From the NCBI GenBank assembly GCA_002269645.1, contig NIVC01001957.1, positions 124,001 through 188,000 of the forward strand: 64,000 nt of DNA, in the 5' to 3' direction. Shown here in pieces: positions 397-52,112 of this stretch. The notes beneath the pieces were generated by a model. It saw only the letters and a program-made list of their open reading frames with translations, was not told where the DNA came from and did not search any database. The first letter of the stretch is position 1, and each line of letters opens with the position of its first letter. Both the position numbers and the translations under genes were made by a program. The DNA is from Macrostomum lignano. Lineage: Eukaryota.

Positions 397-2190
397 ATGC
401 TTTATCCAATGGCACACAATTTCCAACTTGGCTCTGAAAGTTCAGAAGCTGACCAAATCCGACTAGCAGCTGTGGGACTATCTAACTTCCTCGCAGCTCC
501 ATCACCTTTGATTCAATGTGAAGAATTGTCCAGTGTGATTGGTCAAACAGTGCTGCTCAAGCTTGAACACACTTTACCTAGTGGATCATTCAAGATTCGT
601 GGTGCATTTAATAAGATCAGCAGTGTGTTGAAGACTGCTGACCAGGATCAGGTAAAACTTAAAACATTTTTCTAATAACTTTAGCATTGAAAATTAAATT
701 ACATGGACTATCTACCATGCTTCAAAATTCTGCAGATCTCAATTGAGCTAGGCCACTTCTTATGCAAATTGCATCACTAGTATACAAACTTTTTAGTTCA
801 TATATAGCCCACTATAGCACAGTTTATACTATAAACAAGTATGTTTTTGTCTATTAAAGCTATTAAAAAAGACTTCCTTTTCATCGTAAATGGCCCAACA
901 ATGGGGTTTGTACCCTGTGGAACAGTAGTGCAAAGCACCCTTAAGATGGATTTTACCACTGACAAAACGTAATGGAAACATCTGGCTAGAGTACACAGCC
1001 AAGAGATAAGAATTCGGCCCATCATTACTAGATTTGCACATTAGTTCTGTATGTGTATGTTTTGATCTCTACAAAATGAAATAATAACAAGCGTCACGTG
1101 GGCATTCTAATTTCTGTGAGCAGAAACCGCAGTTTGTTACCAGTAGCGCTGGCAACCACGTGCTCGCCTGCTGTCACGTGTGGCAGCAGCTGGGGGTGTC
1201 GGGCAGCGCGGTTTTCGTCCCCACCACGGTGGCCCCGGCCAAGGAGGCAAAACTCGCTCGGCTGCACGAGGCTGGCCTCATTCGGCTCAGCAAAGTCGGC
1301 CGCGAGTGCCTGGAAACCGAGCTGGCAGGTCGCGAGTTCGCTCTCCGCTGTCCCGGCTCAGTGTACGTGCCGCCCTACTCGGACTGGGAGGTCATCCGAG
1401 GTCAGGGCTCGGCCGCGTTCGAGCTGCTCCCAGACCCGACTGGGACCGGCTGGGCCGGGCAGCTGTCCGCCAACTCCGATTGGCTGGCGGCTGGTCACGT
1501 GACTCTGCTTGTGCCGACGGGTGGCGGCGGCCTATTGGCTGGCGTGGCTCTGTGCGCCAAGCTGGGCCGGAGCGGCCTGCGGACGACTGTGATTGGCTGC
1601 CAGCCCGAGGCGGACCAGGTGCTGGCCAAGTCTGTGCAGGTAGGCCTTATCTTAATTTGCTTATCAATAATTAGCAGGATTCAAATAGTAAAGGTTGTCT
1701 CAGTTCCAAACAAGTTTCTATTGGCTGAGAGCGAGTCACGTGATACAGAATTGTAGCAGATGGCACCGTGATTGTAAAACACACCATAAAGAATTCTCAG
1801 TGAGATAATTACCTGATAATTACATTTATTATCGAGGCCGGTCGACTTCTAAGCTACGACGAGGCCGGTTCGCGCGAGACGGTTGCGCAGGGTACGGCTG
1901 GCGCTGTAGAAGACGGCTCGCCGACCTTTGAAGTTTGCCGCCAGCACGTGGACCGCTGGTGCTCGGTGACGGAGCAGGAGATCGCCTGGGCCTGCCTTCG
2001 GCTCAACAGAATTTTAGCGGCCGAAGGGCAGCCGAGAGCGGAGCCAGCGGCCGCCTTGGGAGTCGCTGCAGCCCTGAAGCTGGCGGGCTCGCTGCCTGCG
2101 GGGCCCGTCGTGGCCTTCGTGACGGGCGGCAACGTGGGGGACGCCGAGATGGAGCTGGTGAAGAGGCTGGCTGATGAGGCAGTCTTGTAA
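397..2190 (+). CDS. PLP-dependent Ser/Thr dehydratase / serine racemase family protein, copy 1 (catalytic domain only, SAGNH type)
   Basis: Three exons with phase-0 GT-AG introns: 397-651, 1124-1639, 1837-2190. Motifs: SGSFKIRGA (PLP lysine), FVTSSAGNH, PPYSDWEVIRGQG, VPTGGGGL (phosphate loop), EPAAALGVAA, VTGGN. No C-terminal ACT regulatory domain. Confidence 0.9.
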
Positions 2191-2838
2191 TTGAGCTGAC
2201 TCAATATTTACAGAAAAGACTTTTACTCAATGATTTCTTGTGGACAGCCGAAGTCAAAGATCTCCGCACTTGCAACTAATGCAAATTTTGCTATAAGTAT
2301 GAAGCATGGCGCTAAATTTCGACATGCGCCACAAAGTCGCTGGGAAATCTCTCTATAAAAATTCACTAAGGATAGGAGGAGCGCTCTTTGACGGCAATCG
2401 TCAATGGGATGATTAGCTCAGCCAGTACCTTTTGTCGTGTTATTTATATATAAAAGCTCTAAAATTCTTCCAGTAGTAAATCATGCTTTTCAGTGTAATT
2501 CCTTATTTAGTTTTCAATATTGATTTTATAAATAATTTTTTATCTACACTGCGCCTTGGTGACGTTGACCATCCATTTTATTACAATAGTAGTATTCGAA
2601 TCGCAATATTTTGATTTTATGTCATTTTTTATTCACAATACTGCAAACAGAATAAAAGTGCGCATTGATATATTTTTACTATTTTTTCTTAAAATTCGGA
2701 AATTTCGAATTGTAAATAATAACTGGAAATTTTTCATTATTATTTTAGTTATATTTTATTTATGTGAAGATTCGTTATTCATTACTGGAAATGGTGCAAA
2801 TTATGTAGCTGTAGTGCGTTATAGAGTTATTTCCTCTT

Positions 2839-3415
2839 GTACAGTCTAATCTGCAGTGAGTCACATCCTAATGGATAATGTACAGTCTAATCTGCAGTGA
2901 GTCACATCCTAATGGATAATGTACAGTCTAATCTGCAGTGAGTCACATCCTAATGGATAATGTACAGTCTAATCTGCAGTGAGTCACATACTAATGGATA
3001 ATGTACAGTCTAATCTGCAGTGAGTCACATCCTAATGGATAATGTACAGTCTAATCTGCAGTGAGTCACATCCTAATGGATAATGTACAGTCTAATCTGC
3101 AGTGAGTCACATCCTAATGGATAATGTACAGTCTAATCTGCAGTGAGTCACATACTAATGGATAATGTACAGTCTAATCTGCAGTGAGTCACATCCTAAT
3201 GGATAATGTACAGTCTAATCTGCAGTGAGTCACATCCTAATGGATAATGTACAGTCTAATCTTCAGTGAGTCACATCCTAATGAATAATGTACAGTCTAA
3301 TCTGCAGTGAGTTACAGCCTAATGGATAATGTACAGTTTAATCTGCAGTGAGTCATACGAGTATTCTAATTAATAATGTACAGTTTAATCTGCAGTGAGT
3401 CACATCCTAATTCGC
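2839..3415. repeat. 41-bp minisatellite (about 14 copies)
   Basis: Unit GTACAGTCTAATCTGCAGTGAGTCACATCCTAATGGATAAT, degenerating at the right end. Lies between the two dehydratase paralogs. Confidence 0.95.
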
Positions 3416-3620
3416 ATCGTGACAATCTAATATTAAGTTAGTCACATCCTAAAGGTGTATTATGCATTCTAACGTTTATTAGGCGACATGAATATGCAGT
3501 CTGCTCCGTGATCTTCCATATTGCATCTATACTATACTATATACCAATCTGGTTTTTGAAATAGGTGCAACCATCAAATACTGCAATTGCTCTTCATCAA
3601 AACTTCAGCTGGCAGCCAGC

Positions 3621-6600
3621 ATGCTGCAGTATCCACTCAGCTGTGACGTTGCCCAGTTCTTAGAAAGTTCATCCGAGGCCGACAAAATTCGCTTAGCCGC
3701 CATGAAATTGTCCAGCTTCCTTGGAGCTCCATCGCCTTTATTGGCATGTCCACCAGAGTTCAAGTTTAGAAACAACGATGCTAATGGCCCTCTACTGCTC
3801 AAGCTTGAGCACACTTTGCCAACTGGTTCGTTTAAAGTTCGAGGTGCATTCAACAAAATTAGTAGCACAATGCAAAATGCTACTGCTGACGGACAGGTGA
3901 GTGCCGGGGGTCTGAGACTGGTGAAATCGTGAATAAAGCTATAGTTAATGATAGTGCAATTAGCAGCCACCAAATTCCATTGCTGTAGGTAATCTTACAG
4001 CGATGACTCAATTTATTGCATGCTCAAAATAGAACCTGTGAGAGTTGCTCAGCTTCACGCTTATTGGAAAAGACAAATAGGAACAAAAAGCAACTTAGGT
4101 CAACTGAGAAATAAAAACTAAAAACTGCAGGGACCGACCTCAACGACCAGCCAGTAGTATGTCTCATTTTCGGGCCTGCCAGACCCGTTGCCATGTCGCA
4201 TATTGGCTGCAACGGTGTTGCAATTTCGCGACTATCCTGGGTTTTTGTCTGGCACAGATAACCGAACGCACTTACGACACGATATCCCTCCAGATACTGC
4301 CAAACAAAAAATAAATCTCTGCATGCCTTTGTACAGGAATCAAGTCACAACTTGTGCCATTTACATATGTACATGTAGACGAAAAAGACGTGGTGACCGC
4401 GGCATTAGAAACTCGGCTTCAACTGTTCGTCCTTATTAGCACCCTGTACAATGCGAATTGAATAATCTTTAATCTGAAGAATACGGGGATAATAGTCAGA
4501 CTCGCTGAAATTGATCTCGGAGCGAAATTAAGAGAATATTTTGATTATTGATATCTCATTTCATTTCTCATTTCGATGGTTCCGATTGCCGATCGACTCC
4601 ATTCTTCGATCGGTTTGAGGACCAAGTAGTCATTTGGTTTCTCCTTGCAAAACAGCTCGTTCTGTCGAAAATTAACAGCCCATTGTTATTTGCGACGTGC
4701 ATTGTCTGGAATAGCGGAAGCCCGTTTTGCTTCTATTGCCGCATCATCTACCTTGATCATCTATACCAAAACTTCTTTTGGTCTGTCAATATTATAGAAT
4801 ATGATAAATCAGAAAGCACAAGCGCATGGCAAGATACGTCATCTGCGATAAAAAAGCCAAAACAATTGAGCCTCTATCGAAGCAGTTCTTGCTTTCATCT
4901 GCTGGGACATTTTTCCACAGGAGCCCCGACTAATAAAACCTGCTCATATGCTGCATATCTGCACGAAAGCATAAAACTATTTTAACATTTTATTTCTGTT
5001 CTTTACTTAACACAGGCACCGCCGCACTTCGTTACTAGTAGTTCTGGCAACCACGTGCTCGCCTGCTGTCACGTGTGGCAGCAGCTGGGGGTGTCGGGCA
5101 GCGCGGTTTTCGTCCCCACCACGGTGGCCCCGGCCAAGGAGGCAAAACTCGCTCGGCTGCACGAGGCTGGCCTCATTCGGCTCAGCAAAGTCGGCCGCGA
5201 GTGCCTGGAAACCGAGCTGGCAGGTCGCGAGTTCGCTCTCCGCTGTCCCGGCTCAGTGTACGTGCCGCCCTACTCGGACTGGGAGGTCATCCGAGGTCAG
5301 GGCTCGGCCGCGTTCGAGCTGCTCCCGGACCCGACTGTGACCGGCTGGGCCGGGCAGCTGTCCGCCAACTCCGATTGGCTGGCGGCTGGTCACGTGACTC
5401 TGCTTGTGCCGACGGGTGGCGGCGGCCTATTGGCTGGCGTGGCTCTGTGCGCCAAGCTGGGCCGGAGCGGCCTGCGGACGACTGTGATTGGCTGCCAGCC
5501 CGAGGCGGACCAGGTGCTGGCCAAGTCTGTGCAGGTAGGCCTTGCTGTGTGTTTTATTGAGAGATTTTGTATGATGTGAAGTGGGGACTCTGTATGATAG
5601 TGTGAAGATTCTGTGTGATACTGTGACAATCGTGTGCCATAGTTTGAAGATTAATTATGACAATAATAATCATAATAATAATTGATTACACCTGCCCTAA
5701 TAGGCAGATGTGCACCCGACAGCTCAGCCGCAGCTATTGCGCAGCGCGTCTGAAGGCTGCGTACGGCTGTTCAGTCCAAGGACTGGGGGGTCGCCACACA
5801 CCCTCAATTTTCCCAGCAATTGCTAGCACCCATTTTACAGCTGGGTGAACTGAAGCAGGGTTAAGTGTCTTGCTAAAGGACAAAAATTGTTTTAGTGGGA
5901 TCGGGAATCGAACTCCCGACCTTTTAGTCGTGAGTCCGACTCTAACTACAGGCTCTCTAACCTCCAGTTGTGACAGATTCTGTGTACTGTACAGTACGAG
6001 TCTGACAGATGGTTCAAACTGATTGATAGACAGTTAACTCACGGGGGAATTTCTCAGATGTCAAGACTCAAAGTCGATGATGTTATTCTGACTGTTATGA
6101 CTGTATAAGGCTTCCTGTATGTCAAGTTTTTACTTTTTTATTTTTCATTTTGTTACCTCCCTCACGCGGGAATAGGATTGCAACGACGTAGTTTTGAAGC
6201 TAAACATTTAAAGACGATAAAAGAAAAGCGCAAGTGCACTTTACAAAACACACCTGATCACTTGACCATTGTTGGTGCTGTTTCCCCCCACAAGTTTCTA
6301 TTGGCTGAAACCGAGTCACGTGATAGTTATTTCATCCTATAGCAGCGCAGCTTGTAATAACGCAGTCAATAAAGACAGAAATGTACCACAGATGGCACAG
6401 TGTGATTATAAAACACACAATTAAGTCTTCTCAGTGAGATAATTACCTGATAATTACATTTATTATCGAGGCCGGTCGACTTCTAAGCTGCGACGAGGCC
6501 GGTTCGCGCGAGACGGTGGCGCAGGGCACGGCTGGCGCTGTAGAAGACGGCTCTCCGACCTTTGAAGTTTGCCGCCAGCACGTGGACCGCTGGTGCTCGG

Positions 6601-6824
6601 TGACGGAGCAGGAGATCGCCCGGGCCTGCCTGCGACTTAACAGAATTTTAGCGGCCGAAGGGCAACCGAGAGTGGAGCCAGCGGCCGCCTTGGGAGTCGC
6701 TGCAGCCCTGAAGCTGGCCGGGTCGCTGCCTGCGGGGCCCGTCGTGGCCTTCGTAACGGGCGGCAACGTGGGGGACGCCGAGATGGAGCTGGTGAAGAGG
6801 CTGGCTGATGAGGCAGTCTTGTAA
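3621..6824 (+). CDS. PLP-dependent Ser/Thr dehydratase / serine racemase family protein, copy 2 (SSGNH type)
   Basis: Exons 3621-3896, 5016-5534, 6471-6824, with the same intron positions and phases as copy 1. Motifs TGSFKVRGA, FVTSSSGNH, VPTGGGGL, VTGGN. Confidence 0.9.
3982..4022 (+). other. Relic spliced-leader (SL)-like sequence in intron 1 of dehydratase copy 2
   Basis: GCTGTAGGTAATCTTACAGCGATGACTCAATTTATTGCATG. The last 30 nt match 28/30 to the M. lignano SL as I recall it (...TCTTACTGCGAAGACTCAATTTATTGCATG). It is followed by CT rather than a GT donor. Confidence 0.65.
4560..4790 (-). mobile_element. Decayed Crypton-like (tyrosine recombinase N-terminal region) fragment
   Basis: The minus strand translates as DDAAIEAKRASAIPDNARRK*QWAVNF, resembling the 'AIPxNTxxxTxWAV' start of Crypton/ZMYM-type domains. 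Interrupted by a stop; intronic. Confidence 0.35.
5681..5965 (-). mobile_element. tRNA-derived SINE, copy 1
   Basis: Homologous to 52951-53245 and 56131-56406. The minus strand has a B-box (AGTTCGATTCCC), a central CACCCAGCTGTAAAATGGGTG segment and an (ATT)n-like tail. Confidence 0.8.
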
Positions 6825-7245
6825 TTGAGCTGACTCAATATTTACAGTAAAGACTTTTACTCAATGATTTCTTGTGAACAGCCGAAGTCAAAGATCGCCG
6901 CACTCACAGCTTTTCACTTCAGTCAGAACCGATACTACAGGCTGTTGACCCTCTGCGCTTTGTAGATTTTCGCGTTCTCAGCCTCCTCATGTTCTTCTGT
7001 CCGTTCTTCGCCCTTCCTCTTCAAGCGGTTCCTCTTGTACTTCTTCCTCTATGGCTTCACTACTGCCCCCAGCCAGCCATCATGGTTGATTTGAATGGTC
7101 TATAGTTTATATCCCGTTAGCACAGGGTTTTCTTTTCCAAGTTAAATCGGTTAGGAACACGCAGCTTTGTCCACACTTCGGTTCCGACTGAATTTTAAAG
7201 CTATCGAACTTCTATATTGGTTTCAGAAAATCAATCAAGTCAAAC

Positions 7246-7900: not shown

Positions 7901-9924
7901 CACTCGTGACCTTGGCTAATACCTTAAACTCTCGCTCCACATAAAACTTCCCTTAATTGCATTGTCTATGGCCGAAACAGTCGGTCAGTATAACGACAGA
8001 GAGGTCATTGATCGAAATGTCACTTCACGTTAATGTCTTCTGATTAATGACCGGTCATTATCTGTAAGACAAACGGCAATTTTAATAGCCTGTGGCTGTA
8101 GAGGCGCTGATTTCGGCTTGCCTGAAATGTTGAGTTGTGAGTCTTGCTGGAGAGGCATGAAAGTATCTGGAGAGAGATGGAAAGGGCTGGAGAGGGCTGG
8201 TGAGGAGGTAGAGTGAGGCTGCTAAAGAGACTGAAGCCACAGGGAGACGGGAGGAAAGAGTATCGGATAAATGGGGAGCAAGGGATACGAACACAACGGA
8301 ATACAGTGGCGGCAACGAAATGATGAGACAACACCGCTCTGCTTATGTCTATGGATTCGAGGGCCCGAATTAAGTCTGCCCGAAAATCCATTGGCAGAAC
8401 CATTAGTTCGGCTTGTTCGAAAAAATAGGTAGGTTTAGTTAAATTTTTAGTTTAGTTAAAAATGATAGATTTTGTTAAAAATAGGAGGCAAAAAGGTGTC
8501 GTTGTTTTATTTGAAACTCGAAATATCTCAGAGACTTTTACCGTGAAAAACCGGCGTCCCATGTTAGTTGAATTTCTACTAATACTTCAAATAATTAAAG
8601 ACTTAATTGACGTCGATTTTGAGTTTTATGGTATGTTAATTTAGACTAAATTGCAATTAGCACAACAGATTTCAACAAAATCAATTCAAGAAAAAAACAC
8701 CAATGGAAACCAGGGCTTTCTTACAGAGACCCATGTAAATGATAAATTAAATGCACTTAATTTTGGTACAACATCTTGCCAAGTCGCGTATACAGGAATC
8801 AGCTCTGTGTCTAAAATCGATGCTTAGATGTTCACTTTTGGTAGTTGAATCATCCGCGGGATTTTTTATCATATCTAATCGCATCGCTGTTTGGCGAGAT
8901 ATAACACAATTGAAACGTCCCAAAATAAGACTAACCTACTTGATACTACTTACAAGCCAAAGTTATAGTAGCAAATGCCGATGTCACGTTATTTGATGTT
9001 GGCCGTGACCCTTAAAAGGGCCGTTTTAGTCCTAAAATAAGTTGAAGTCAACTTAGGCGAAGTGGATGGTGTAGCGGAGCACTTGGCAATAAGGGCAGGA
9101 AACTGCCGTAGTCGTTTTTATTATCAATGTAAATAGTAAGTTTGGTTGTTACTGGCAAATAACAAACTATTGCTTTCTGGGCACTGGCGGCTGCAACAAT
9201 GGTTTCTTTTAAGGTAAATTGGATGTGAGTTCAAGCGACAGACGAGTGATATAATGGCGACGTAACGTGATGATCAATGGCAATGAGTACAGTGAAGGCA
9301 GTGAGACGTAGTAGGCAGGCGGATGAGCAGTGGCGAAGTTGGCGTCAGCCGTGGCGTGAGGTAAGGAGGCTCGAGGCAGCCAGACAGAGAGAAGGAAAAC
9401 AAGGCTAGAAGGCTAGGCAAGCCAGACGGGACGGAGGCAAGCCTAAGGAGAGAGAACACAGAACACAAGAACAGGGACGAGCAGGGAGACGAGGAAGAGT
9501 GAAACCCCCCAGCCCGCCAGGCGAAGGTTTAATAAAGGAGCGCAGAGGGGGGGGGGTAGCGCGAAGCACGAGTGATTTTCATTGGCTGGCGAGAGAACTT
9601 AAAATTATCGATCGTGCCAATTTTATACGGTCGCGAGAGAGGATAGTAAAATATACAGTGAATTAGAAATTGCCACAAAATCGTAGGGCACTACTACAAG
9701 TAAACGTCGCAATAAACAAATGGAAAAGTTTAGTTGAAACGGTGAAACTGAAGGGTTGAAACTATAGAGAAACAGCAGTCCAACGGCCCTTTTCGGGACC
9801 ACCTTAAACTGACAACGTCACAACCGACTCTTTGGTCTCAAGTGTTCGCTTCGATTATTTTTGCAAAAATACTTCATCTTACTTAATAGGTGACACCACA
9901 GAATATTCTGTGGGGGACACTGAT

Positions 9925-10748
9925 GACTCCTCTGTGTCTAACAGGTGACTCCTCTGTGTCTAACAGGTGACTCCTCTGTGTCTAACAGGTGACTCCTCTG
10001 TGTCTAACAGGTGACTCCTCTGTGTCTAACAGGTGACTCCTTCTGTCTAACAGGTGACTTCTCTGTGTCTAACAGGTGACTTCTCTGTGTCTAACAGGTG
10101 ACTCCTCTGTGTCTAACAGGTGACTCCTTTGTGTCTAACAGGTGGATCATCTGTGTCTAACAGGTGACTCCTCTGTGTCTAACAGGTGACTCCTCTGTGT
10201 CTAACAGCTAGGTGACTCCTCTGTGTCTAACAGGTGACTCCTCTGTGTCTAACAGCTAGGTGACTCCTCTGTGTCTAACAGCTAGGTGACTCCTCTGTGT
10301 CTAACAGGTGACTCCTCTGTGTCTAACAGGTGACTCCTCTGTGTCTAACAGGTGGATCATCTGTGTCTAACAGGTGACTCCTCTGTGTCTAACAGGTGAC
10401 TCCTCTATGTCTAACAGGTGGATCATCTGTGTCTAACAGGTGACTCCTCTGTGTCTAACAGGTGACTCCTCTGTGTCTAACAGGTGACTTCTCTGTGTCT
10501 AACAGGTGACTCCTCTGTGTCTAACAGGTGACTTCTCTGTGTCTAACAGTTGACTCCTCTGTGTCTAACAGGTGACTCCTGTGTCTAACAGGTGACTCAT
10601 CTGTGTCTAACAGGTGACTCCTCTGTGTCTGACAGGTGACTCATCTGTGTCTAACAGGTGACTCCTCTGTGTCTGACAGGTGACTAGCTCCTCTGTGTCT
10701 AACAGGTGACTCATCTGTGTCTAACAGGTGACTCCTCTGTGTCTAACA
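9925..10748. repeat. 22-bp minisatellite
   Basis: Unit GGTGACTCCTCTGTGTCTAACA, with variants. Confidence 0.95.
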
Positions 10749-11931
10749 GTTTGTTTATGAATCCATTACATGTATATAAAATTAACACTACAAAGTCTAA
10801 CATAATCTGAATGGAGTTCAGAATAAAAACAAAACGTAAATGAGAAAAATCCAATTTACTTAGTGTTTAAATGTACGTTTTATTTATAAAAAATAAGAAA
10901 ATATTTAGAACGCGGAAGTATATTAACTATTGAATAATTTAGCGACTTAAGTTTGATTTACAGTCTATCACAATCGGCTTCATAAATGAAATGAAACGTT
11001 ATCATAAAAGGCTGCAAATGACACTAAAAGTAAGTAGTAAATTAAATAATCTACACAATGTTAAGCTGGTGACAGAAAATCTCTTAAAATCAAAATTTAA
11101 GTTTTTTATGTTTTAAAAATCGGTTAGAAAATTGTTAGATTAAAATTCAAGAGAATTTGACAAGTTCAAGTTAAAGAAAATAAAATAGCAAGAGGAAGTG
11201 TGAAAAATCTAAGATAAACTAAGGCAGCAATTAAAAGTACCCTTTGCTTGGTAAACTTTAAATAAACCACAGAACATACTGCATAGTCTATGGTACCATC
11301 TGTTTTCTTCACCTCAGAAGAGACTTCAGCTTAACGCTTGTTAATCCGTTGAGAATGTCTATGGCCAGAAGGCAAACTTACGTTTTGCCTCACGTGGGAA
11401 GTTTCTTGACGTCTGTTTTAAGTCTGTTTTAAGTTTTAAGTTCAAGAAGTCTCATAGCATAGGAGAAAAATCCAAGGACTACTTAAGTATAGAAGGACAA
11501 GAAACTATGATTCTTAGAAATGGTTAATGAGGCTGGTTTTCGCCTAAAAATACACTACGAAGATAGGAACTTTTCATTTTTTAGAACAAAGCTTTTTCAG
11601 TACTTTAGTAGTCCTTGGAAAGAGCATTCTAGAACTTTCTAGAAAGCTAGAATGCGCACGAGGTGGCCACGTGATTCAGTGTCTATGCTGGTGTCCGCTT
11701 TTTTGTAATTTACCAGTATGTCCAACAAGTTTTGTCAAAGACTTACTTTGCGCGGTAAACAACTTGTTTAAAATCAAGTGCAAGTTTTCATGTCGAATGT
11801 ACTTATTGATACATTAAGTACTTATTATAAAAGGCATTCCAGGCAATCATTAAAGACTAATAAGAAGACCACATTTTCTAGTAAAACTTTCTAAATTATC
11901 GACGCATGAGCACTGACACGTAGATTACACG

Positions 11932-14900
11932 TTACATTACTACACACGTAGCAGACTTCGGATTAACGCTAAATGTTCCCGTAATTTCGTTGAATGCGAC
12001 GCCGTCGTTCTCACTGCCGGTTTCCACGGATGTAGCAGCGGCAGTAGCTACAGGTTGCGCAACAGAAGTGGCTCCTGTTGTTGCTGCTGTCGGACGTTTC
12101 GTCAGCTTGAGCCCAGCATAGGCAGCCACGGGTCCGCAGTCAATGGCCAAATAGTTCAAATCTGGCGTGAATGCCAAACAGTTGATGCCGTGCAAAGATT
12201 CGAATGCGCTCAGCACGGTCCAACGAGCAGTCTCCCACACGATGAGGCAGTGATCCATGCCGACCGTCACCATTCTCTGATAGTCCGGCGTGAACTGCAG
12301 CTTCAGTACGAAACTTTTGTGCCGCCGGACGCACCGTTCCAAGCTGCCGCCTTCAACCGACCAGAACAGCAGCGACCGAAATCCTGCGGTGACAAGAGTC
12401 CTACCATTCGATGGGAAGAATTTCATGCAGATGCAGGAGCTGCGAAGCTGGAACTTTTTCAGATATTTGCCCGAATCGGCTTCGATGAGCTTCACGGAGC
12501 CATCGGTGCTGGCAGCTGCTGCAAGTCGGCTGTCGTCGCTGACGGCGATGGCGCTGCAGCCCGCCATCATGGTGTCCATCTGGTTGGGGTTCAATGGCCC
12601 ACTGTCGCCCGTCTCAAGGCTGTACGCGATTGGAAAGTCGAAAAAGGTGCCGATGCACTGGGGAATGGGAGGTGTTTGAAATTTACTTGACTTCAATTTC
12701 AGATGACGAGCCGTAATTTTTATAATTAAAATTTTCAACAAAAGCAACATTTTAGACGGGCGAGAAATTGAGGATCTAGTTAGACGGAGAAGAGTCACCT
12801 GTTAGAAGTCACCTGTTAGACAGCGAGGAGTCACCTGTTAGACACAGAGGAGTCACCTGTTAGACAGAAGGAGTCACCTGTTAGAAGTCACCTGTTAGAC
12901 AGCGAGGAGCCACCTGTTAGACACAGATGATCCACCTGTTAGACACAAAGGAGTCACCTGTTAGACACAGAGGAGTCACCTAGCTGTTAGACACAGAGGA
13001 GTCACCTGTTAGACACAGATGAGTCACCTGTTAGACACAGAGGAGTCACCTCTTAGACAGCGAGGAGCCACCTGTTAGACAGAGAGGAGTCACCTGTTAG
13101 ACACAGATGATCTACCTGTTAGACACAAAGGAGTCACCTGTTAGACACAGAGAAGTAAACCGCTAGACAGAGAGGAGTCACCCGTTCGACATGTACTTTA
13201 CCACCAGTTAAATATCTAACGACTTACAAAGCTCTTAGCAAAATACACAAAATATAGCATTAATTTCTATTCACCTTTTTCCCATTTGGCGTGAGCCCGA
13301 CCTGATTAAAGCCGTACAGTCCGGGCATTTTATGCATTCGCTCCCCAGTTGATAGGTCAAACACGTATCCGTAGCATTCCATACCGGCTTTACCAGCCAC
13401 TAGAATGTTGTTGCTAAGAGCCAGACAACTCGGCTCGCCTCCCTCGATCGATAGAGTGTGCAATTCTGCGCCTAAAATGCATTTAGTTTGTTACATATAC
13501 ACGTACACTACTTTGTTTAATATACTTTAGATGCTATTAACTTACACTTCTTCAGTAGTATGCAGTGCAGAACGCCGTGCTTTTCGGCAACAACGAGCCA
13601 ACTTTCGTTGGACTCTGTCAGGCAGATGGGCGATTCGTATTTGCGACTTTGTTTCGGTTTCAGATTTCCGCTGCCGAGGTCGTGGAAGAGAACCCAACCG
13701 CTGGATCGAATGCAGGCTAACAGGTTGTACTGGCTACAGAGTTTGTGTGGGGGTGCAAATGTAATTTGGTTACTGCCTTCCAGTTACATTAGCTACTGGC
13801 CGTTGTGGCTTAAAGTACACTTCTTTTCTAGCATGGCTTAACTACCACCACGAATCTATGATGGTTGTGGCTTAACTGCTATCACAAATCTAACAGTTGT
13901 GGCTTAACTACTATCACAAATCTATATTAGTTGTGGTTTAACTACCCTCAGTTGTACCACAGAACTCACACGCTCAGATGCAAGCCAACAGTTTTCTCCG
14001 ATTCAGGATTTTTCTCGTAGCCAGTCTGAGCTTTCAGCTCTTGCAGTTCTCGCATCACTTCCGGATTCGTGCTCCGTCGATGACTGACTGCTCGATCAAT
14101 CAATTTCTGTCGATCCCAAACGCAACAAATATTGTCCTTAGCAACGGTTAGTAAATAACCTCGCCAGGACCAGCACAATAACAGTTCGCTCTCGTGCCCA
14201 CCAATGCTGCATAGCGTTTCGGCTTCGTCGAGATATTTACTAGCTTGCAGGGTTGCCGGTCGAAAAGTGCTGACCGTGAGATGTCGATCGTGGTTGAGGC
14301 AGTGGCACACCAGGCCCTGTTCAATTGACAGCCAAGCCATGCCGGTCACAGCGTGCCTGCTGGCGGGAATTCTGCTGACAACCCGACGTCTGGCCATGTC
14401 GTACACTAGTATTGGCCACTGACTGTTGCCATTGATGATTATGTGCTGATTATAGGCTGCCAATAGGAATCTAGCGTCCGGACTGGGACACAGCAGGCTC
14501 AGCTTGTACTTTACGTAGCCATTCGGTAGACGCTGTGCTTCGCCCTTGCTGACGTCAATCAGAGCCAAATCGCATTCGCCAGTTTTGTCCAAATGAGACG
14601 TACTCAACGAGGGGAACTCGCTTGTGACGAAGGTGTGCGGACCGACTGGCACGAGGAGCTGATTCCAGGTAGCTAGGAACTCCAGCTGGTCTCTGACCAA
14701 CGAAGCCGTGAATTTATCTTTATCGGAGTACTCTTCGCCAATAAACGAACGAATTCTATAAGACAATTTTTCGGACTCAACGGGCCAGACTAGGTACTCG
14801 AGTAGGCTGCTAATTCCTACCACGTAGCGACCGCACACAGACGTGAATGCGTGCAGAAGAACGTCCTCGGAGTCCAGAGAGTACACGACTCGAACCTTGG

Positions 14901-17900
14901 GCGCATCACTGCTGGACAAAGATTCCAAGGGGAAATCGAACAGCTGCAGTTTAGAGGCTTTCGGATTGGTGAGGTCAAGACAGAGAAGCGACCGCCCGGA
15001 GTGAGTAAAGCAGAGACGCCAGCACTGCTGCGGCGACCCGAATACCAGAGACTTGCTGACCGTGTCAAACACGGCGTCCATGCCCTGCGACATTCGTGAA
15101 AAAAAAACAAAAATGTTTTGTTCTTCCTTCTAAGGACAATGTTACACACAATGACAGACGCACTTTAATAAGTCTCTATGTTTCCTGAAGTACACTGAAA
15201 AGCAGTAAAAAAGTCAGAAATTTAACTAACCTTTGCCTGTTCGTAACTCTTGTCCCGATTGAAAGTGACGGACAGAATAACATATCGCTGATCCGCAGCA
15301 TTCTGCTGTTTAACCTGATGAATATCGAACGGCAGGTCGAAGCTGTCAGTCATGCGCAGCCGAGTGTCCAGCATCTGCAGCTGTGAGGTCCCGCCGTGTT
15401 TGAATTGCGTCACGAATAGCGATTGGTAATCCAGCGAGCGAGCGAACGGGCTGTCGTTGAAACGACCTGACATGAAATTGAACAGAATGTTTGACAGGAT
15501 TCTACCCTCGTAAAATAAGATTATGAAAATATATTTAATATTTTGACACTATTGACAGCATCTTTGACTCGCGTAGAGGTCATCTCATCTTTCTTACACG
15601 TAGAGGTTACCTACGTGTTAGAACCGATGGGTCAACCCATTGGGAACTAGGTTCTCGAACTTTTTAGTACACAATATCCACTGATTATAAATTAGACCCC
15701 CAACCAATTTTCACGTGGAAAAATAAAAAAGCAGCAATTACCAGTGTTAAATAAAAATCTACTCACCTCCGGGGTATCCGCACACAACTTCCCGCCTAGC
15801 AACAAGTTCTCCACCTGGCTGCGGCACGCACTGGCTTAATGGCAGCAGACAGGGAGCCTGCTGACCTTCAGCGAGCTCTACGGCGCGCTTGCAAAGAGTT
15901 TTAAAGTGCACCGGCACGCTGCTGCAGCCGGCCCACTGGCCAACCAGCTGCGCAGTAAGCGATCTGGGGCTCGAGATCAAACAGCTGTGCAGAAGCTCCA
16001 GCGTTGCTAAGAGATCTTCGCAGGCTCGTTTCGATTTGTTATCGGCTTCGTTTATGGACGTCTTTTCGATAGCCAACTCCAGGTCACTGAGCAGTCTAGA
16101 CAGGCCTAGGGCTTCAGCGACGCCGATCAACCAATCGACGTTGCAGGCGTATCGATCGACAAATTCGGCAACTCGACCGCCCAGCATGAGGTGGTGCGGC
16201 AGCTCGTCTAGTTGACGAAGATTCAACTGGAACGAAGTCAGTCGAAGTGGCTGCGCAGGAGCGCCTCTGTCGCAGTCGGCGTACGAAGCTTTCTTGCGCT
16301 TGAACAGCTCCAGCGGTTTTGGTTGACCGTACCAGCGTCCTGTGTTGAAGGGTTAAAAACAACACATACATACTAATCATTCATACTAAAACAAAATCCT
16401 TATCACTTCCCACCTCGCAGTACCGTCTATGAATTTCTAAGAAAACTTACCGCTAAAGTAATCGGCAAGGCAGCTGTGCAGTTTCTCGTTCAGCTGAGCG
16501 TCGCTGCAGTAGCGCCTCTCCGCAGCCTCGGCAAACTGCCTATGGTACCAAGCCACAACTCTAGAGCCGCCGAAGCCCTGCCTAGTGACTAAATACTCTC
16601 CGCAATCGTCCCTGATTCTTGTCCACAGCAGTGGCGGGAGGCGCACCATCTTTGGATCCGGCGGCAGCTGATGCAGATAGGTATCCTGGAGGACCTCGTC
16701 GTCTAGCGAGAGCACGTCTTCGAGCTCCTGCTCGGTGAGGCCGGACCGACTCAGCGCTAGATAGGCGAATGCTCGAGATACTAGCACCTGACCATGGCTT
16801 TTCTCCAAGCCGGTCAGGACCTGATCGATCGCCTGATCCAAAGTTGTTGGCAGTGAGTGGTTCCCAACCTCATTAAATGAGCGCCATTTTAAAGCTTGAT
16901 CAACCAGAAGCTTTGAAAACAATGGCTGGCCAGTTTTGGATACTGATTGAAGCAGCACCTGTCTCTGTCTATCGTAAGGGTTGGGAAACGGGGCACGGAA
17001 TGTAGGCGGGCTCAAATGACCATAGGAAAGTATCGCGGGATCATTTATGCACAAATACACCAAGGGAGACTTACTTTCCCGTGAGACTTCTTCCAGCAGC
17101 TTTCAGAAGCGACTCAACTAGAGCCTGTGAATCGGCCGGAACCATCGGGTCCAGCTGCACCAGGCAGTCATTGGGAAATCTACCGCGAGCGCTACTCAAA
17201 CAGACGCCGAGGCAGCGATCGCTAGCAAAAGTGACCACGAGTTTGACATTCGCTGGCAGCTCAGATGGTAAGAAGCTCAAACTATGAGCACCATCACTAG
17301 TCTCAAGTTGGTCCACCGAGTCGAGCACAAGAAGCAGAGCTCGTCCGTCAGTTGCAGCCGCTGACGCTCGATAAAGCAGCGCTTTGAAATGCTTGACAAG
17401 AAAGTGATAGTCTGTCGACAGCTCTGGATCGGTGTGCACGTCAAGTTCGTGCAAGCTGTACAGCAGGCAGATCTGATGGCACAAAGACGCCAAGAGTCGT
17501 TTGATAGTCAACGACTGAGCAGATGTTCCTAGGAATCTTAGCACCTTCACCGGCACGGTTGGGAACCAGGCGTCTGCAGTGGATGCCACCGCGGCGGCTA
17601 AGGACGTCTTGCCGCTGCCCGAAGGTCCGTGCAGGATCACTGGGCGGGAAATCAGATCGCCAGGCTGTGACAGCGGCGACTCCGTCAGCTTGCGCTGTCG
17701 CTCGCGCTCGCGCTCCTAGAGAGGAGGGAATAAATATTTGTGAGCTACACAGGTACGTATTATATGAGTTTAGGCTCAAGGGCACTTATGTTCGCAGCGA
17801 AAAGTATATGCATACTACTGAAAATCAAGTGCTTTAGCGTCACCCCGATCTAATTCCTAACCTCTGTGTCGTCCATAGCGAAACTGACTCCCATTTGCTC

Positions 17901-19583
17901 CTGCAACGCTTCGCCCATCTTCTGGTGCTGTTGGCTTGGACTTTCTTCTTTGTCTTCGTCCTTTTGAGTTTTGGCCGCGGTTGCATCACCCTGAGAACGT
18001 CGCTCACTCATCAAAGCGAGACGGACTCGCTCAAGATCAGCTGAGCGGCCAGCGAAAGTTTCTAGTTTACTGACAGCCAGATGCAGATGATGCAGTACTT
18101 CAGTGTACAGTTTCGGCGACTCCATACTGTAAGAAAATTGAGATGACCTAGCGGAGTCTACCTGTTGGCGAACAAGGTTGACGAAATCGCGACAGAGATT
18201 CTTTAGATAGTGCGTGTGCGACAGCAGGCCGCTGTCAACACCTTTATCTGTCCATTTCAGTCCCAAGTACTTCAGCATCTGCGACTCGGACAGCACGGCG
18301 GGAATCTTTGTTGATTTCAAACGTTGCAGAAGCGCCTGCGGTTCAGAGGCCACCTCGCCATCCTCAATGTCGATGAAACGACCTGCATTTTTCAATGTAA
18401 AAAACGATGCAAGTTTACAATTTCTATGATTGTATTAATGACGTGATACCAGATCAAACTCACTCGCTATTCTGTCGCCGATATTTATTTCGTCAAATTC
18501 TCGAACTATGCACAGGCAGCGAGAGTCAGCATCAACTCTAGCCTCGGCATCAAGTAGTCCCGCTTGAATTTCTTGCTCAGTAACAGAGGCTAGATACTTA
18601 AATGCGTCAGCTTCAGTCATTGTTGCCTTGGAAACGCAGGATTTGGCGCAGGATCGAAGAAATTCCGTTATGGAAGCGTTCTCCAATTGCCATTTTTTCT
18701 CGTCCTCCCGTCGGAGTCTCTCATCGTCTCGATTGTCGTAGTTGACCAGCACAGCCGTAATTGGCAGCAGAGCGTAACGTGGAGGTCGCGAGTTTGCGTC
18801 AAGTTTGAACCAACGATGAATGGATTGATCATCCAATTTAAGGCGTTTAGCTTCGTCAATGAGCTGATTGAATTCTTCAGTAGGAATCTCGTTGGGATAG
18901 TAGCGGTGACCATATTTCGCACCTAAGATTACCTGGAATATTTATTTTCCTAACTTTTAAAAAAAAGATTCATAACTGACTTGTAACTTTTTGGCAGAAA
19001 AATAGAGACAGGTTTTTATTTCTAAATGCGTACATGTCTAGCCTTAGAAATTTAGTGTGTTACTCACAGCAAAACATGGTCCCAACGAAACCTGGCGACA
19101 TTTCAACACTTCTCGAATGCACAGATCCGTCGTTTTGTGCTCCAACGCTGCGTCGTCTCTGACGCCCCATCGCATGTCGGCAACCTTTGAATTATTCACG
19201 AATCAATCAGTAACATTAAGCCCTCAATATCAAGACGGCTACCGATGTACCTGAAAGCTTACCTGAAAATCGAGTCGTCTTTCTCGGCAGTAGACCCTGA
19301 GTTTAGGAATCGCATCACGAAATAAAGCATTGCGCTCTTCGCCAGTGTCTGAGTGAGACAAGCATACAAATTATTTTTGTTGACATCTAGAAACTATCTG
19401 AGCCTTAATTGATCAACAAAAAGATTTAAATTGCTGAAGTAAGTTATACTGTTTCTCACCTGTAAAAGTTGAGCTCAAAAACACTCTGACAATTGTCTTC
19501 TCCTGATCTGGCAATTCGCGCAGGCAGCCTTCAAGGACCTGCTTAAACTTGGCTTCTGCACTCTCCCTGCGAGGTGTGAGCAT
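11932..19583 (-). CDS. NWD1: NACHT and WD40-repeat protein, NWD1/NWD2 family (STAND NTPase)
   Basis: About 13 exons. ATG at 19583: MLTPRRESAEAKFKQVLEGCLRELPDQEKTIVRVFLSSTFT|DTGEERNAL...|VADMRWGV...|VILGAKYG, the family N-terminus. Walker A HGPSGSGKT (about 17600), Walker B LLLVLDSVD, SRSGLTEQELEDVLSLDDEVL, WYHRQF, then WD40 exons to the stop at 11932. NWD1 vs NWD2 orthology is not resolved. Confidence 0.88.
12795..13190. repeat. Reverse-complement copy of the 22-bp minisatellite (last intron of the NWD gene)
   Basis: Unit GTCACCTGTTAGACACAGAGGA is the reverse complement of the 9925-10748 unit. Confidence 0.92.
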
Positions 19584-51685: not shown

Positions 51686-52112
51686 TCTGTGATACTCTTT
51701 TTAACTTGGCGATAATCTCTTTATGTCGAGGAAGAGGATTTCTGAGTCCGAGTCTATGCATCATAAAAATTGTTTTTGATTGTAGTTTGCAGATAGCAAA
51801 CAAAATACAATTAGAATTGCGCTTTCCTGAGTATCATATCGGCTAGCTGGATCCCATCAACCGGTATTGCATATAAGTTGATATTTATCGATTTGGAATT
51901 TTGCTGTTTACATTCTCATCTGGTAGATACTCGTGTGAAGCATTCCCTACTGCAGATGCTGAAAACTGTTTGCACTGCAGTTGAGGCACCAATCAGGGCT
52001 CTTGGAGACAATTAGCTATTAAACGTTGTATAGCCTTTATCTGCTGAAGGTAACTATTTAATACTTGTCGATTTCAAAGTCCTCTTCTGCAGCCATCTTT
52101 CGGGAAACGAAA

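What the first reader, a model, noticed from the sequence alone, without database searches (positions are those of the whole stretch)
1124..5054. Tandem paralogs differ at the racemase/dehydratase switch residue (SAGNH vs SSGNH)
Seen: copy 1 encodes FVTSSAGNH (GCT, 1148-1150) and copy 2 encodes FVTSSSGNH (TCT, 5043-5045), while the rest of exon 2 is almost identical. Established: in PLP fold-type II enzymes the residue before GNH is Ser84 of human serine racemase, the re-face proton donor needed for racemisation; serine dehydratases have Ala there (Ala65 in SDH). Inference: the locus may pair an L-Ser/Thr dehydratase with an amino-acid racemase or D-amino-acid-active lyase, a possible D-amino-acid system in this animal. 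Caveats: Ser is necessary but not sufficient, since some pure lyases also have SSGNH. The substrate loop reads PPY, not the SSS of invertebrate aspartate racemases, and the metal-ligand Glu position is Gln (CQP).
Basis: partly seen in the sequence, partly recalled or inferred. Interest (0 to 1): 0.75.

Follow-up and report, generated by a model that had tools for sequence, protein, structure and literature searches.

The report
Tandem flatworm dehydratase genes, Ala/Ser switch
Two neighbouring copies of a bacterial-type serine/threonine dehydratase gene in the flatworm Macrostomum lignano keep an old alanine-versus-serine difference at a catalytic position, exactly where gene conversion between them stops, but nothing yet shows that either copy is a racemase.

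Summary
Two tandem three-exon genes on the + strand encode FVTSSAGNH (GCT 1148-1150) and FVTSSSGNH (TCT 5043-5045). The window is Macrostomum lignano DNA. Copy 1 is the annotated BOX15_Mlig018515g1; copy 2 is intact but unannotated.

The difference is neither a sequencing error nor a polymorphism, because a second locus (NIVC01000268.1) carries the same pair with the same Ala/Ser.

The residue aligns with Ser84 of human serine racemase, but the proteins are not racemase-family or SDS-family members. They are divergent relatives of the PRK06815 'threonine/serine dehydratase' clade, and they lack the racemase metal site, the Gln89 ATP link and Arg135.

In that clade Ser is the norm (108 Ser, 8 Thr, 1 Asn of 119). 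Ala occurs only in M. lignano copy 1. So copy 1 is the unusual one, not copy 2.

New result: the Ala/Ser nucleotide is the last site with orthologous signal (24 sites against 0). From there to the stop codon, both loci show concerted evolution (23 sites against 0). N-terminal dS is saturated, against 0.03-0.05 downstream.

Both copies are most likely beta-eliminating dehydratases. A dehydratase/racemase split is possible but untested.

The parts
397..651 (+). Copy 1 exon 1 (Met1-Gln85; holds the Schiff-base lysine, SGSFK66IRG). GC 0.44, GC3 0.36.
   Evidence: The spliced product is 100% identical to PAA62256.1 / BOX15_Mlig018515g1. GT donor at 652.
1124..1639 (+). Copy 1 exon 2 (KPQFVTSSAGNH ... 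GGGG loop ... GCQPE). GC 0.68, GC3 0.80.
   Evidence: AG acceptor at 1122-1123, GT donor at 1640.
1148..1150 (+). Copy 1 switch codon GCT = Ala94, aligned with Ser84 of human serine racemase. Base 1148 (G here, T in copy 2) is the last site with orthologous signal before the conversion tract.
1837..2190 (+). Copy 1 exon 3 including the stop codon (… FVT353GGNV …). GC 0.67.
1149..2262 (+). Copy 1 side of the gene-conversion (concerted evolution) tract. It runs from just after the first base of the switch codon, through intron 2 and exon 3, to about 72 nt past the stop codon.
   Evidence: Four-way alignment with locus L003: 23 LOCUS-pattern sites, 0 orthology sites and 1 discordant site between 1149 and 2190; the orthology pattern returns at 2272. 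blastn gives 1127-1648 = 5022-5543 (98.7%) and 1745-2270 = 6375-6904 (94.7%).
3621..3896 (+). Copy 2 exon 1 (Met1-Gln92; TGSFK74VRG). 54% amino-acid identity to copy 1 exon 1. Not annotated in GCA_002269645.1.
   Evidence: Intact in the second locus too. Between-locus dN/dS is 0.28.
5016..5534 (+). Copy 2 exon 2 (APPHFVTSSSGNH …).
5043..5045 (+). Copy 2 switch codon TCT = Ser102, the state typical of the family.
6471..6824 (+). Copy 2 exon 3 including the stop codon.
5046..6904 (+). Copy 2 side of the conversion tract. It is interrupted by a copy-2-specific insertion in intron 2 (about 5544-6289, plus 6326-6374).

Best explanation
The locus holds two intact tandem paralogues of a fold-type II PLP enzyme in Macrostomum lignano. 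They are a divergent, animal-encoded offshoot of the mostly bacterial PRK06815-type 'threonine/serine dehydratase' clade.

Shown: the duplication is old, because synonymous sites in the N-terminal quarter are saturated. Everything from one base after the first position of the switch codon to about 70 nt past the stop codon has been homogenised by gene conversion. This happened separately in each of two M. lignano loci after those loci split. The N-terminal quarter, up to and including the Ala/Ser codon, has escaped homogenisation. Ser (copy 2) is the ancestral, family-typical state. Ala (copy 1) is derived and unique among 119 sampled clade members.

Inferred mechanism: both proteins are beta-eliminating L-Ser/L-Thr ammonia-lyases. 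Lys66 (copy 1) or Lys74 (copy 2) holds PLP and removes the alpha-proton on the si face, the beta-OH leaves, and the aminoacrylate hydrolyses to a 2-oxo acid plus ammonia. Copy 1, lacking the re-face hydroxyl, should be restricted to L-substrate elimination. Copy 2 keeps whatever re-face chemistry the clade has, which could be minor racemisation or use of D-substrates.

Either selection or simple loss of homology could fix the conversion boundary at this codon; the data do not separate the two.
For: Family: Pfam PALP scores 165.5 and 159.7 bits against a cut-off of 35. The best NCBIfam model for copy 1, copy 2 and P0002 is PRK06815, about 50 bits ahead of the next model. The family profile matches TdcB best in the PDB (356 bits), against 291-313 for serine racemases and 180-192 for SDS. 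The AF2 model has pLDDT 91 and a fold-type II fold, with TM 0.82-0.88 to IlvA, TdcB and serine racemase. The catalytic Lys, the SxGNH loop, the GGGG loop and the N1-contacting Thr are all present.

Gene conversion: there are 24 orthology sites and 0 locus-pattern sites up to 1148, then 23 locus-pattern and 0 orthology sites from 1149 to 2190. In the N-part, dS is saturated and dN is 0.38. In the C-part, dS is 0.05 (c1-c2) and 0.032 (c1'-c2'), below the between-locus values of 0.084-0.12. The 3' ends of the tract differ between loci (about 2263-2271 against 2197-2224), so the events were independent.

Both copies are constrained: between-locus dN/dS is 0.17 (copy 1) and 0.28 (copy 2) in the N-part and 0.11 (copy 1) and 0.20 (copy 2) in the C-part. 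All splice sites and reading frames are intact at both loci.

Polarity: the switch residue is S108/T8/N1/A2 in the signature clade. The relative P0002 (60% identity) has Thr (ACC).

Chemistry of the position: PMC6424897 and PMC5998037.
Against: No enzyme of this clade is known to me to have been characterised, so 'dehydratase' is an annotation and not a measurement.

The Macrostomum proteins score only 183-189 bits against the PRK06815 cut-off of 371. They also deviate at residues that are 85-98% conserved in the family (Q60L, A92S, G98V, N171S, D275Q, G327P), so substrate or reaction may have shifted.

Copy 2 is unannotated at both loci, and no matching protein or fragment is in the 15-billion-protein collection, so its expression is unproven. 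Full-length copy 1 is also absent from the Logan-derived proteins, which makes that absence weak evidence.

The coincidence between the boundary and the switch codon rests on one ancestral boundary. Later conversions cannot extend past the edge of homology anyway.
Confidence: 0.65

Rival explanations
1. One reading: the pair is functionally split. Copy 1 (Ala) is an L-Ser/L-Thr dehydratase. Copy 2 (Ser) is an amino-acid racemase or D-amino-acid lyase that supplies or removes D-amino acids in the worm. Selection for this split is what stops gene conversion at the switch codon.
For: The position aligns with the re-face base Ser84. Ser84 is required for racemisation and D-Ser dehydration but not for L-Ser dehydration. 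Lys114, proposed to activate Ser84, is conserved. The Ala/Ser difference is old and is kept at two loci. The conversion tract stops one base after the discriminating nucleotide, with no erosion for 283 nt (window pair) and 59 nt (L003 pair). D-amino acids are bioactive in other flatworms, for example D-Trp in planarian ovary induction (PMC5364533).
Against: Ser is the default in 108 of 119 clade members annotated as dehydratases, including two mollusc proteins, so Ser alone predicts nothing special. The racemase metal site (E210, D216), Gln89, Arg135 and the HPNQ/SSS loop are all absent. About 38 other residues differ in the unconverted N-terminal part. The boundary can be explained by loss of homology alone. 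Expression of copy 2 is unproven.
Confidence: 0.2
2. Copy 2 is a silent or decaying duplicate. Its 3' three-quarters look healthy only because gene conversion from the expressed copy 1 keeps repairing them. Under this model the Ala/Ser difference has no functional meaning.
For: Copy 2 is not annotated at either locus of GCA_002269645.1, and neither its exact protein nor any fragment of its N-terminus is in the protein collection. In the window, conversion ran from copy 1 into copy 2 at the 3' flank (c2 = c1 = c1', different from c2', between 2224 and 2262). The window copy 2 also carries a 746-nt insertion in intron 2.
Against: Exon 1 lies outside the conversion tract, yet it is open, has a start codon and conserved GT/AG sites at both loci, and shows 8 synonymous against 8 non-synonymous changes where about 12 non-synonymous are expected under neutrality (dN/dS 0.28). 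The catalytic Lys motif is intact. Synonymous divergence between the two N-terminal parts is saturated, so the duplication is old, and a silent copy would be expected to have picked up stop codons or frameshifts in that time.
Confidence: 0.12
3. The genes are a recent bacterial horizontal transfer or a contaminant, and the high GC of exons 2-3 is donor composition.
For: Apart from P0002, the nearest relatives are bacterial or metagenomic at no more than 44% identity. Exons 2-3 are 67-68% GC in a 36-53% GC region. An NJ tree does not join the Macrostomum clade to the mollusc members (0-1% bootstrap).
Against: The genes have three exons with GT-AG introns and a repeat insertion. They lie between ordinary animal genes (NACHT-WD40, AASS-like, SLC26) and occur at two loci. 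Identity to any bacterial protein is at most 44%, so a transfer could not be recent. The scallop member passes the PRK06815 cut-off and the chiton member nearly does (379 and 360 bits against 371). The FKxRG-SxGNH loop is 22-25 residues only in the Macrostomum proteins, P0213 and the molluscs, against 20 in 120 of 136 sequences. The GC-rich part coincides exactly with the conversion tract, as GC-biased gene conversion would produce.
Confidence: 0.1

Closest known systems
NCBIfam NF005292 / PRK06815 'threonine/serine dehydratase' clade (bacterial, with mollusc 'TdcB-like' members such as Ylistrum balloti P0191 and Liolophura sinensis P0234)
   Same: It is the best-scoring model for both copies and for P0002. 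The shared signatures are SxGNH, S/PPY, GCQPE and GTAG. Size and fold also match.
   Different: The scores (183-189 bits) are half the cut-off of 371. The Macrostomum proteins have an N-terminal extension and a roughly 17-residue insertion (PDPTGTGWAGQLSANSDWLAAGH). Highly conserved residues are replaced (Q60L, D275Q, G327P and others). Copy 1 has Ala where the clade has Ser or Thr.
Catabolic threonine dehydratase TdcB (PDB 2GN0) and the IlvA catalytic domain
   Same: TdcB is the closest solved structure by profile (356 bits) and by fold (TM 0.85-0.88). TdcB and IlvA carry SAGNH, as copy 1 does, and TdcB has the PPY loop (alignments).
   Different: Identity is only 25-27%. The TdcB model scores 114-122 bits against a cut-off of 453. 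Leu replaces the nucleotide-coupling Gln89 equivalent. There is no ACT regulatory domain.
Eukaryotic serine racemase / aspartate racemase family (human SRR, PDB 3L6B; Scapharca AspR, PDB 5YBW)
   Same: The fold is the same. The Lys56, Ser84 (copy 2 only), Asn86, His87 and Lys114 equivalents are present.
   Different: The metal ligands E210 and D216 are Q and V, Q89 is L, R135 is T, and HPNQ/SSS is PPYS. Sequence matches are weaker (1.8e-18 for serine racemase and 4.6e-8 for AspR, against 7e-27 for a threonine dehydratase).
Mammalian L-serine dehydratase SDS/SDSL (Ala65; PDB 1P5J)
   Same: Ala lies at the switch position, as in copy 1. The Ala65 assignment is from my own knowledge and was not checked here.
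   Different: SDS is the most distant of the dehydratase and racemase relatives (1.5e-13; 180-192 bits).
Partial concerted evolution of tandem duplicates in which function-determining sites escape conversion, for example primate L/M opsin genes (from my own knowledge)
   Same: Most of the gene is homogenised by gene conversion, while a segment carrying a functionally important residue keeps its old divergence.
   Different: Here the escaped segment is the whole 5' quarter and not an island around the site. A functional difference between the copies has not been shown.

Membership tests
Fold-type II PLP-dependent enzymes (Pfam PF00291 PALP) | Profile match above the Pfam gathering score | tested here: met
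   165.5 bits (copy 1) and 159.7 bits (copy 2) against a cut-off of 35, covering profile positions 6-295 of 295.
Fold-type II PLP-dependent enzymes (Pfam PF00291 PALP) | Schiff-base lysine in the S-F-K-x-R-G motif, the S-x-G-N-H loop, the GGGG phosphate loop, and a Ser/Thr/Cys facing the pyridine N1 | tested here: met
   K66/K74, SSA/SGNH, PTGGGGL and T353 are present. F65, K66, R68, G69, S93, G95, N96, H97 and G218-G220 are invariant in 136 relatives.
Fold-type II PLP-dependent enzymes (Pfam PF00291 PALP) | Two-domain alpha/beta fold superposable on solved members | tested here: met
   The AF2 model has pLDDT 91.1 and pTM 0.91. Foldseek gives TM 0.82-0.88 (normalised by target length) to IlvA, TdcB and serine racemase.
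NCBIfam PRK06815 threonine/serine dehydratase (equivalog) | Score at or above the curated cut-off of 371 bits | tested here: not met
   Scores are 188.7 (copy 1), 183.5 (copy 2) and 183.4 (P0002). PRK06815 is still the top model. Bacterial P0125 scores 424 and scallop P0191 scores 379, both above the cut-off.
NCBIfam PRK06815 threonine/serine dehydratase (equivalog) | Clade signatures A-S-S-G-N-H, G-C-Q-P-E and D-G-T-A-G-G | tested here: inconclusive
   GCQPE is present. SSGNH is present in copy 2 only. DGTAGG reads QGTAGA, although the Asp is 98% conserved in the family.
Serine/aspartate racemase family (SRR type) | Re-face Ser (hSR Ser84) | tested here: inconclusive
   Copy 2 has Ser102 and copy 1 has Ala94. 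So the feature is met by one copy only, and it is shared with 108 of 119 dehydratase-annotated relatives.
Serine/aspartate racemase family (SRR type) | Divalent-metal site (Glu210, Asp216), the Gln89 nucleotide link, Arg135, and the HPNQ or SSS substrate loop | tested here: not met
   The aligned residues are Q, V, L, T and PPYS.
Serine/aspartate racemase family (SRR type) | Measured racemase activity | not testable with these tools
   This needs the recombinant enzyme and a chiral assay.
TdcB / IlvA threonine ammonia-lyases | Score at or above the curated cut-offs (TdcB 453; IlvA models 378-801) | tested here: not met
   TdcB scores 122 (copy 1) and 114 (copy 2). IlvA models score 104-136 (copy 1) and 110-112 (copy 2). 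No ACT or C-terminal regulatory domain is present.
SDS/SDSL L-serine dehydratases | Closest sequence relationship to solved SDS structures | tested here: not met
   SDS chains score E = 1.5e-13 to 4e-11, against 7e-27 for a bacterial threonine dehydratase. By profile they score 180-192 bits, against 356.
Concerted evolution by gene conversion between tandem paralogues | Paralogues within a locus are more alike than orthologues between loci, and the tract has sharp boundaries | tested here: met
   There are 23 locus-pattern and 0 orthology sites in 1149-2190, against 0 and 24 in 1090-1148. Within-locus dS is 0.032-0.05, below the between-locus 0.084-0.12. The 3' ends differ between loci.

The most novel reading that the evidence does not exclude
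Natural selection holds a one-residue catalytic switch (Ala94 against Ser102, the re-face proton donor) apart against recurrent gene conversion. Under this reading, the flatworm runs a strictly L-specific dehydratase next to a sister enzyme with racemase or D-amino-acid lyase activity. That would be an animal D-amino-acid enzyme recruited from a bacterial-type dehydratase clade unrelated to the canonical SRR family.
Probability: 0.15. Interest if true: 0.7.

Novelty: new member of a known kind. Interest (0 to 1): 0.4.

Why it matters
If the Ala/Ser difference really changes the chemistry, this would be a second, independent route to D-amino-acid metabolism in animals, outside the serine/aspartate racemase family. 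It would sit in a flatworm lineage whose relatives respond to D-amino acids during sexual maturation (PMC5364533). The pair would also be a natural A-to-S swap experiment with a nearly identical C-terminal three-quarters.

Even without that, the locus is a clean example of partial concerted evolution. Its conversion boundary is resolved to within 60 nt and sits beside a catalytic residue. The GC3 contrast inside one gene (0.36-0.46 against 0.74-0.80) tracks the conversion tract, which is useful for studying GC-biased gene conversion in M. lignano.

There is also a practical annotation result: copy 2 is an intact gene missing from the annotation at both loci.

Tried and rejected
1. Sequencing error or polymorphism. 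Rejected, because the same Ala/Ser pair occurs at a second locus with an orthologous pattern.

2. More copies in the window. tblastn finds only the two.

3. Transcript evidence for copy 2. Its exact protein is not in the collection, and no fragment matching its N-terminus appeared among the hits. This is uninformative, because full-length copy 1 is also absent from the Logan-derived proteins. No paper mentions the gene ids, or Macrostomum together with racemase.

4. Separating dehydratase from racemase by fold. Foldseek scores IlvA, TdcB and serine racemase equally, so it cannot discriminate.

5. A single eukaryotic clade. A shared longer loop links Macrostomum, P0213 and the molluscs, but NJ bootstrap support for that grouping is 0-1%. 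The origin (old animal gene or old transfer) is left unresolved. No ML tree program was available.

6. Dating the duplication against P0002. In the N-terminal part the counts are c1=c2 14, c1=P0002 9 and c2=P0002 7. This leans weakly towards a duplication after the split and is not significant.

7. A tRNA or SINE call for the insertion in intron 2 of copy 2. ARAGORN and Rfam find nothing.

8. A literature check of the SDS A65S result. It was not found in the searchable library, so it is cited only as my own recollection.

Full report
**What is in the sequence.** The first 7 kb of the window hold two head-to-tail genes on the + strand. Each has three exons, GT-AG introns and phase-0 junctions.
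- Copy 1: exons 397-651, 1124-1639 and 1837-2190, 374 aa.
- Copy 2: exons 3621-3896, 5016-5534 and 6471-6824, 382 aa.
- Copy 1 reads AGT AGC GCT GGC AAC CAC (SSAGNH) at 1142-1159. Copy 2 reads AGT AGT TCT GGC AAC CAC (SSSGNH) at 5037-5054.

Only these two copies occur in the window.

**Source and annotation.** The copy 1 protein is 100% identical to PAA62256.1, 'hypothetical protein BOX15_Mlig018515g1' of Macrostomum lignano, which UniRef names L-serine ammonia-lyase. The window lies on contig NIVC01001957.1 of assembly GCA_002269645.1. Copy 2 is not called as a gene there, and its exact protein is absent from the 15-billion-protein collection. Neighbouring genes are ordinary animal genes: NACHT-WD40, an AASS-like lysine-ketoglutarate reductase/saccharopine dehydrogenase, and an SLC26 transporter. 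The genes are therefore resident flatworm genes and not contamination.

**Not an error or a polymorphism.** A second contig (NIVC01000268.1, locus L003) carries the same tandem pair. Copy 1' is annotated (P0121, SSAGNH). Copy 2' is unannotated but intact (APPHFVTSSSGNH). Synonymous divergence between the loci is about 0.08-0.12. The Ala/Ser difference is therefore older than the split of these loci.

**Concerted evolution, with a boundary at the switch codon.** This is the main new result. I aligned the four copies (c1 and c2 from the window, c1' and c2' from L003).
- From 1090 to 1148, every informative site supports orthology (c1=c1', c2=c2'): 24 sites, none contrary.
- From 1149 to the stop codon at 2190, 23 informative sites support c1=c2 against c1'=c2', none supports orthology, and one is discordant.
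- The orthology pattern returns at 2272.
- The last orthologous site is base 1148, the G/T that makes Ala or Ser.
- After it, the window pair has no difference for 283 nt and the L003 pair none for 59 nt.

Nei-Gojobori estimates agree. In the N-terminal part, c1 against c2 has saturated dS and dN 0.38. In the C-terminal part, dS is 0.05 (c1-c2) and 0.032 (c1'-c2'). Both values are below the between-locus 0.084-0.12, so each locus has undergone conversion since the loci split. The 3' ends of the tracts differ (about 2263-2271 in the window, about 2197-2224 in L003), which confirms independent events. In the window, the 3' flank of copy 2 has been overwritten with copy 1 sequence.

The tract also coincides with a compositional jump. 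Exon 1 has GC3 0.36-0.46 and exons 2-3 have 0.74-0.80, while other exons in the window sit near 0.5-0.6. This fits GC-biased gene conversion. However, the related transcript P0002 is GC-rich throughout, so an originally GC-rich gene whose unconverted exon 1 has decayed is equally possible.

**Both copies look functional.** All reading frames, start codons and splice sites are intact at both loci. Between-locus dN/dS in the unconverted N-terminal part is 0.17 for copy 1 and 0.28 for copy 2. For copy 2 that is 8 synonymous and 8 non-synonymous changes, where neutrality predicts about 12 non-synonymous of 16. These counts are small, and expression of copy 2 remains unproven.

**What family the genes belong to.**
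- Both proteins are full-length Pfam PALP domains.
- The best NCBIfam model is PRK06815 'threonine/serine dehydratase' at 183-189 bits. That is about 50 bits ahead of EutB, IlvA, TdcB and threo-3-hydroxyaspartate ammonia-lyase, but far below the cut-off of 371.
- Bacterial relatives pass or approach that cut-off, and so do two mollusc proteins: scallop P0191 at 379 bits and chiton P0234 at 360 bits.
- Apart from one 60%-identical transcript of unknown species (P0002, Logan runs SRR30276812 and SRR30276804), no relative exceeds 44% identity.
- Against solved structures, the single sequence and the family profile both rank threonine dehydratases first (8Y1J, 1VE5, TdcB 2GN0), then serine racemases, then SDS, with aspartate racemase well behind.
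- The AF2 model (pLDDT 91) superposes equally well on IlvA, TdcB and serine racemase, so the fold cannot decide the reaction.

**The switch residue in context.** I aligned the proteins with human serine racemase.
- Ala94 and Ser102 sit at Ser84. The Lys56 and Lys114 equivalents are conserved.
- Gln89 is Leu, Arg135 is Thr, Glu210 is Gln, Asp216 is Val, and HPNQ is PPYS.

The literature confirms several points about Ser84 (PMC6424897 and PMC5998037). It is the re-face base and is essential for racemisation and D-Ser dehydration, but it is not needed for L-Ser dehydration. S84A, S84D and S84N abolish racemisation, while S84T retains it at about 10-fold lower efficiency.

The inference needs re-framing. 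Among 136 aligned relatives the position is Ser in 116, Ala in 10, Thr in 9 and Asn in 1. Restricting to the 119 sequences that share the clade signatures (GC.P and T/S-A-G), it is S 108, T 8, N 1 and A 2, and both Ala sequences are M. lignano copy 1 and copy 1'. P0002 has Thr (ACC). All other Ala-bearing sequences in the alignment lack the clade signatures. Ser in copy 2 is therefore the inherited default, and the evolutionary event is loss of the hydroxyl in copy 1.

**Most likely mechanism.** Shown: the architecture, the conserved PLP-binding residues, the old duplication, the ongoing conversion, and the polarity of the Ala/Ser change.

Inferred: both enzymes catalyse PLP-dependent beta-elimination of L-Ser or L-Thr. 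Copy 1 cannot perform re-face proton transfer and should be strictly L-specific. Copy 2 retains whatever re-face chemistry the clade has.

Whether selection keeps conversion from crossing the codon is open. The boundary is sharp and un-eroded at both loci. However, once the upstream 25 nt of exon 2 (8 substitutions plus a 3-nt indel) and intron 1 had diverged, later tracts could not extend further in any case. The real coincidence is therefore a single ancestral boundary. My rough estimate, not a computed value, is that a random boundary would land next to one of the dozen or so catalytic residues in a 375-codon gene a few per cent of the time.

**Caveats.**
- I know of no characterised enzyme in this clade.
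- The Macrostomum proteins deviate at several residues that are 85-98% conserved in the family: Q60L, A92S, G98V, N171S, S249D, D275Q/N and G327P. They also carry a lineage-specific insertion, so their substrate may differ from Ser or Thr.
- The phyletic origin is unresolved. A longer FKxRG-SxGNH loop is shared only by the Macrostomum proteins, P0213 and the molluscs, yet NJ bootstrap support for that group is 0-1%.

**Verdict.** These genes are new (one of them unannotated) members of a known enzyme kind. They show a neat and well-resolved case of partial concerted evolution that ends at a catalytic residue. The racemase or D-amino-acid reading is possible, at about 15-20%, but it is not indicated by anything beyond the single residue.

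Noticed in passing
window 3621-6824 (and L003 13796-17002): Copy 2 is an intact three-exon PALP gene that is missing from the GCA_002269645.1 annotation at both loci. Its protein is absent from the 15-billion-protein collection.
   Followed up: yes
window 397-651 and 3621-3896 versus 1124-2190 and 5016-6824: Composition splits sharply inside one gene. Exon 1 has GC3 0.36-0.46 and exons 2-3 have GC3 0.74-0.80, and the split coincides with the gene-conversion tract. The related transcript P0002 is GC-rich throughout. GC-biased gene conversion, or decay of an originally GC-rich gene, could explain it.
   Followed up: partly
window 2838-3452: A 41-bp tandem repeat (14.8 copies, 92% matches) fills much of the spacer between the two genes.
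   Followed up: no
window about 5544-6289 and 6326-6374: Intron 2 of copy 2 has insertions that are absent from copy 1, copy 1' and copy 2'. They include a stretch around 5880-5960 that looks tRNA- or SINE-like by eye, but ARAGORN and Rfam report nothing.
   Followed up: partly
window 32625-41345: An 8.7-kb satellite of a 21-bp unit (415 copies, 94% matches) with strong GC skew. Many other mini- and microsatellites are present, for example 9924-10749, 24440-25219, 25641-26447, 27251-28212, 49930-51693, 54705-55753 and 61499-62496.
   Followed up: no
window 11900-18950 (-), 21233-31861 (+), 57530-61016 (-): Neighbouring genes by Pfam on open reading frames: a NACHT/AAA_16 plus WD40 gene; AlaDh_PNT_N plus Sacchrp_dh_C (AASS-like, lysine catabolism); and an SLC26 sulfate permease plus STAS.
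   Followed up: partly
copy 1 residues 60, 92, 98, 154, 171, 249, 275, 327 (both copies and P0002): The whole Macrostomum clade replaces residues that are 85-98% conserved in the PRK06815-like family (Q60L, A92S, G98V, A154G, N171S, S249D, D275Q/N, G327P). It also carries a roughly 17-residue insertion before the GGGG loop. This hints at a shifted substrate pocket, independent of the Ala/Ser site.
   Followed up: partly
L001 / L002 (Logan SRR30276812, SRR30276804): The only close relative outside M. lignano is an intronless 1.3-1.8 kb contig, presumably a transcript of an unidentified species. It encodes a 401-aa protein, 60% identical, with Thr (ACC) at the switch position.
   Followed up: partly
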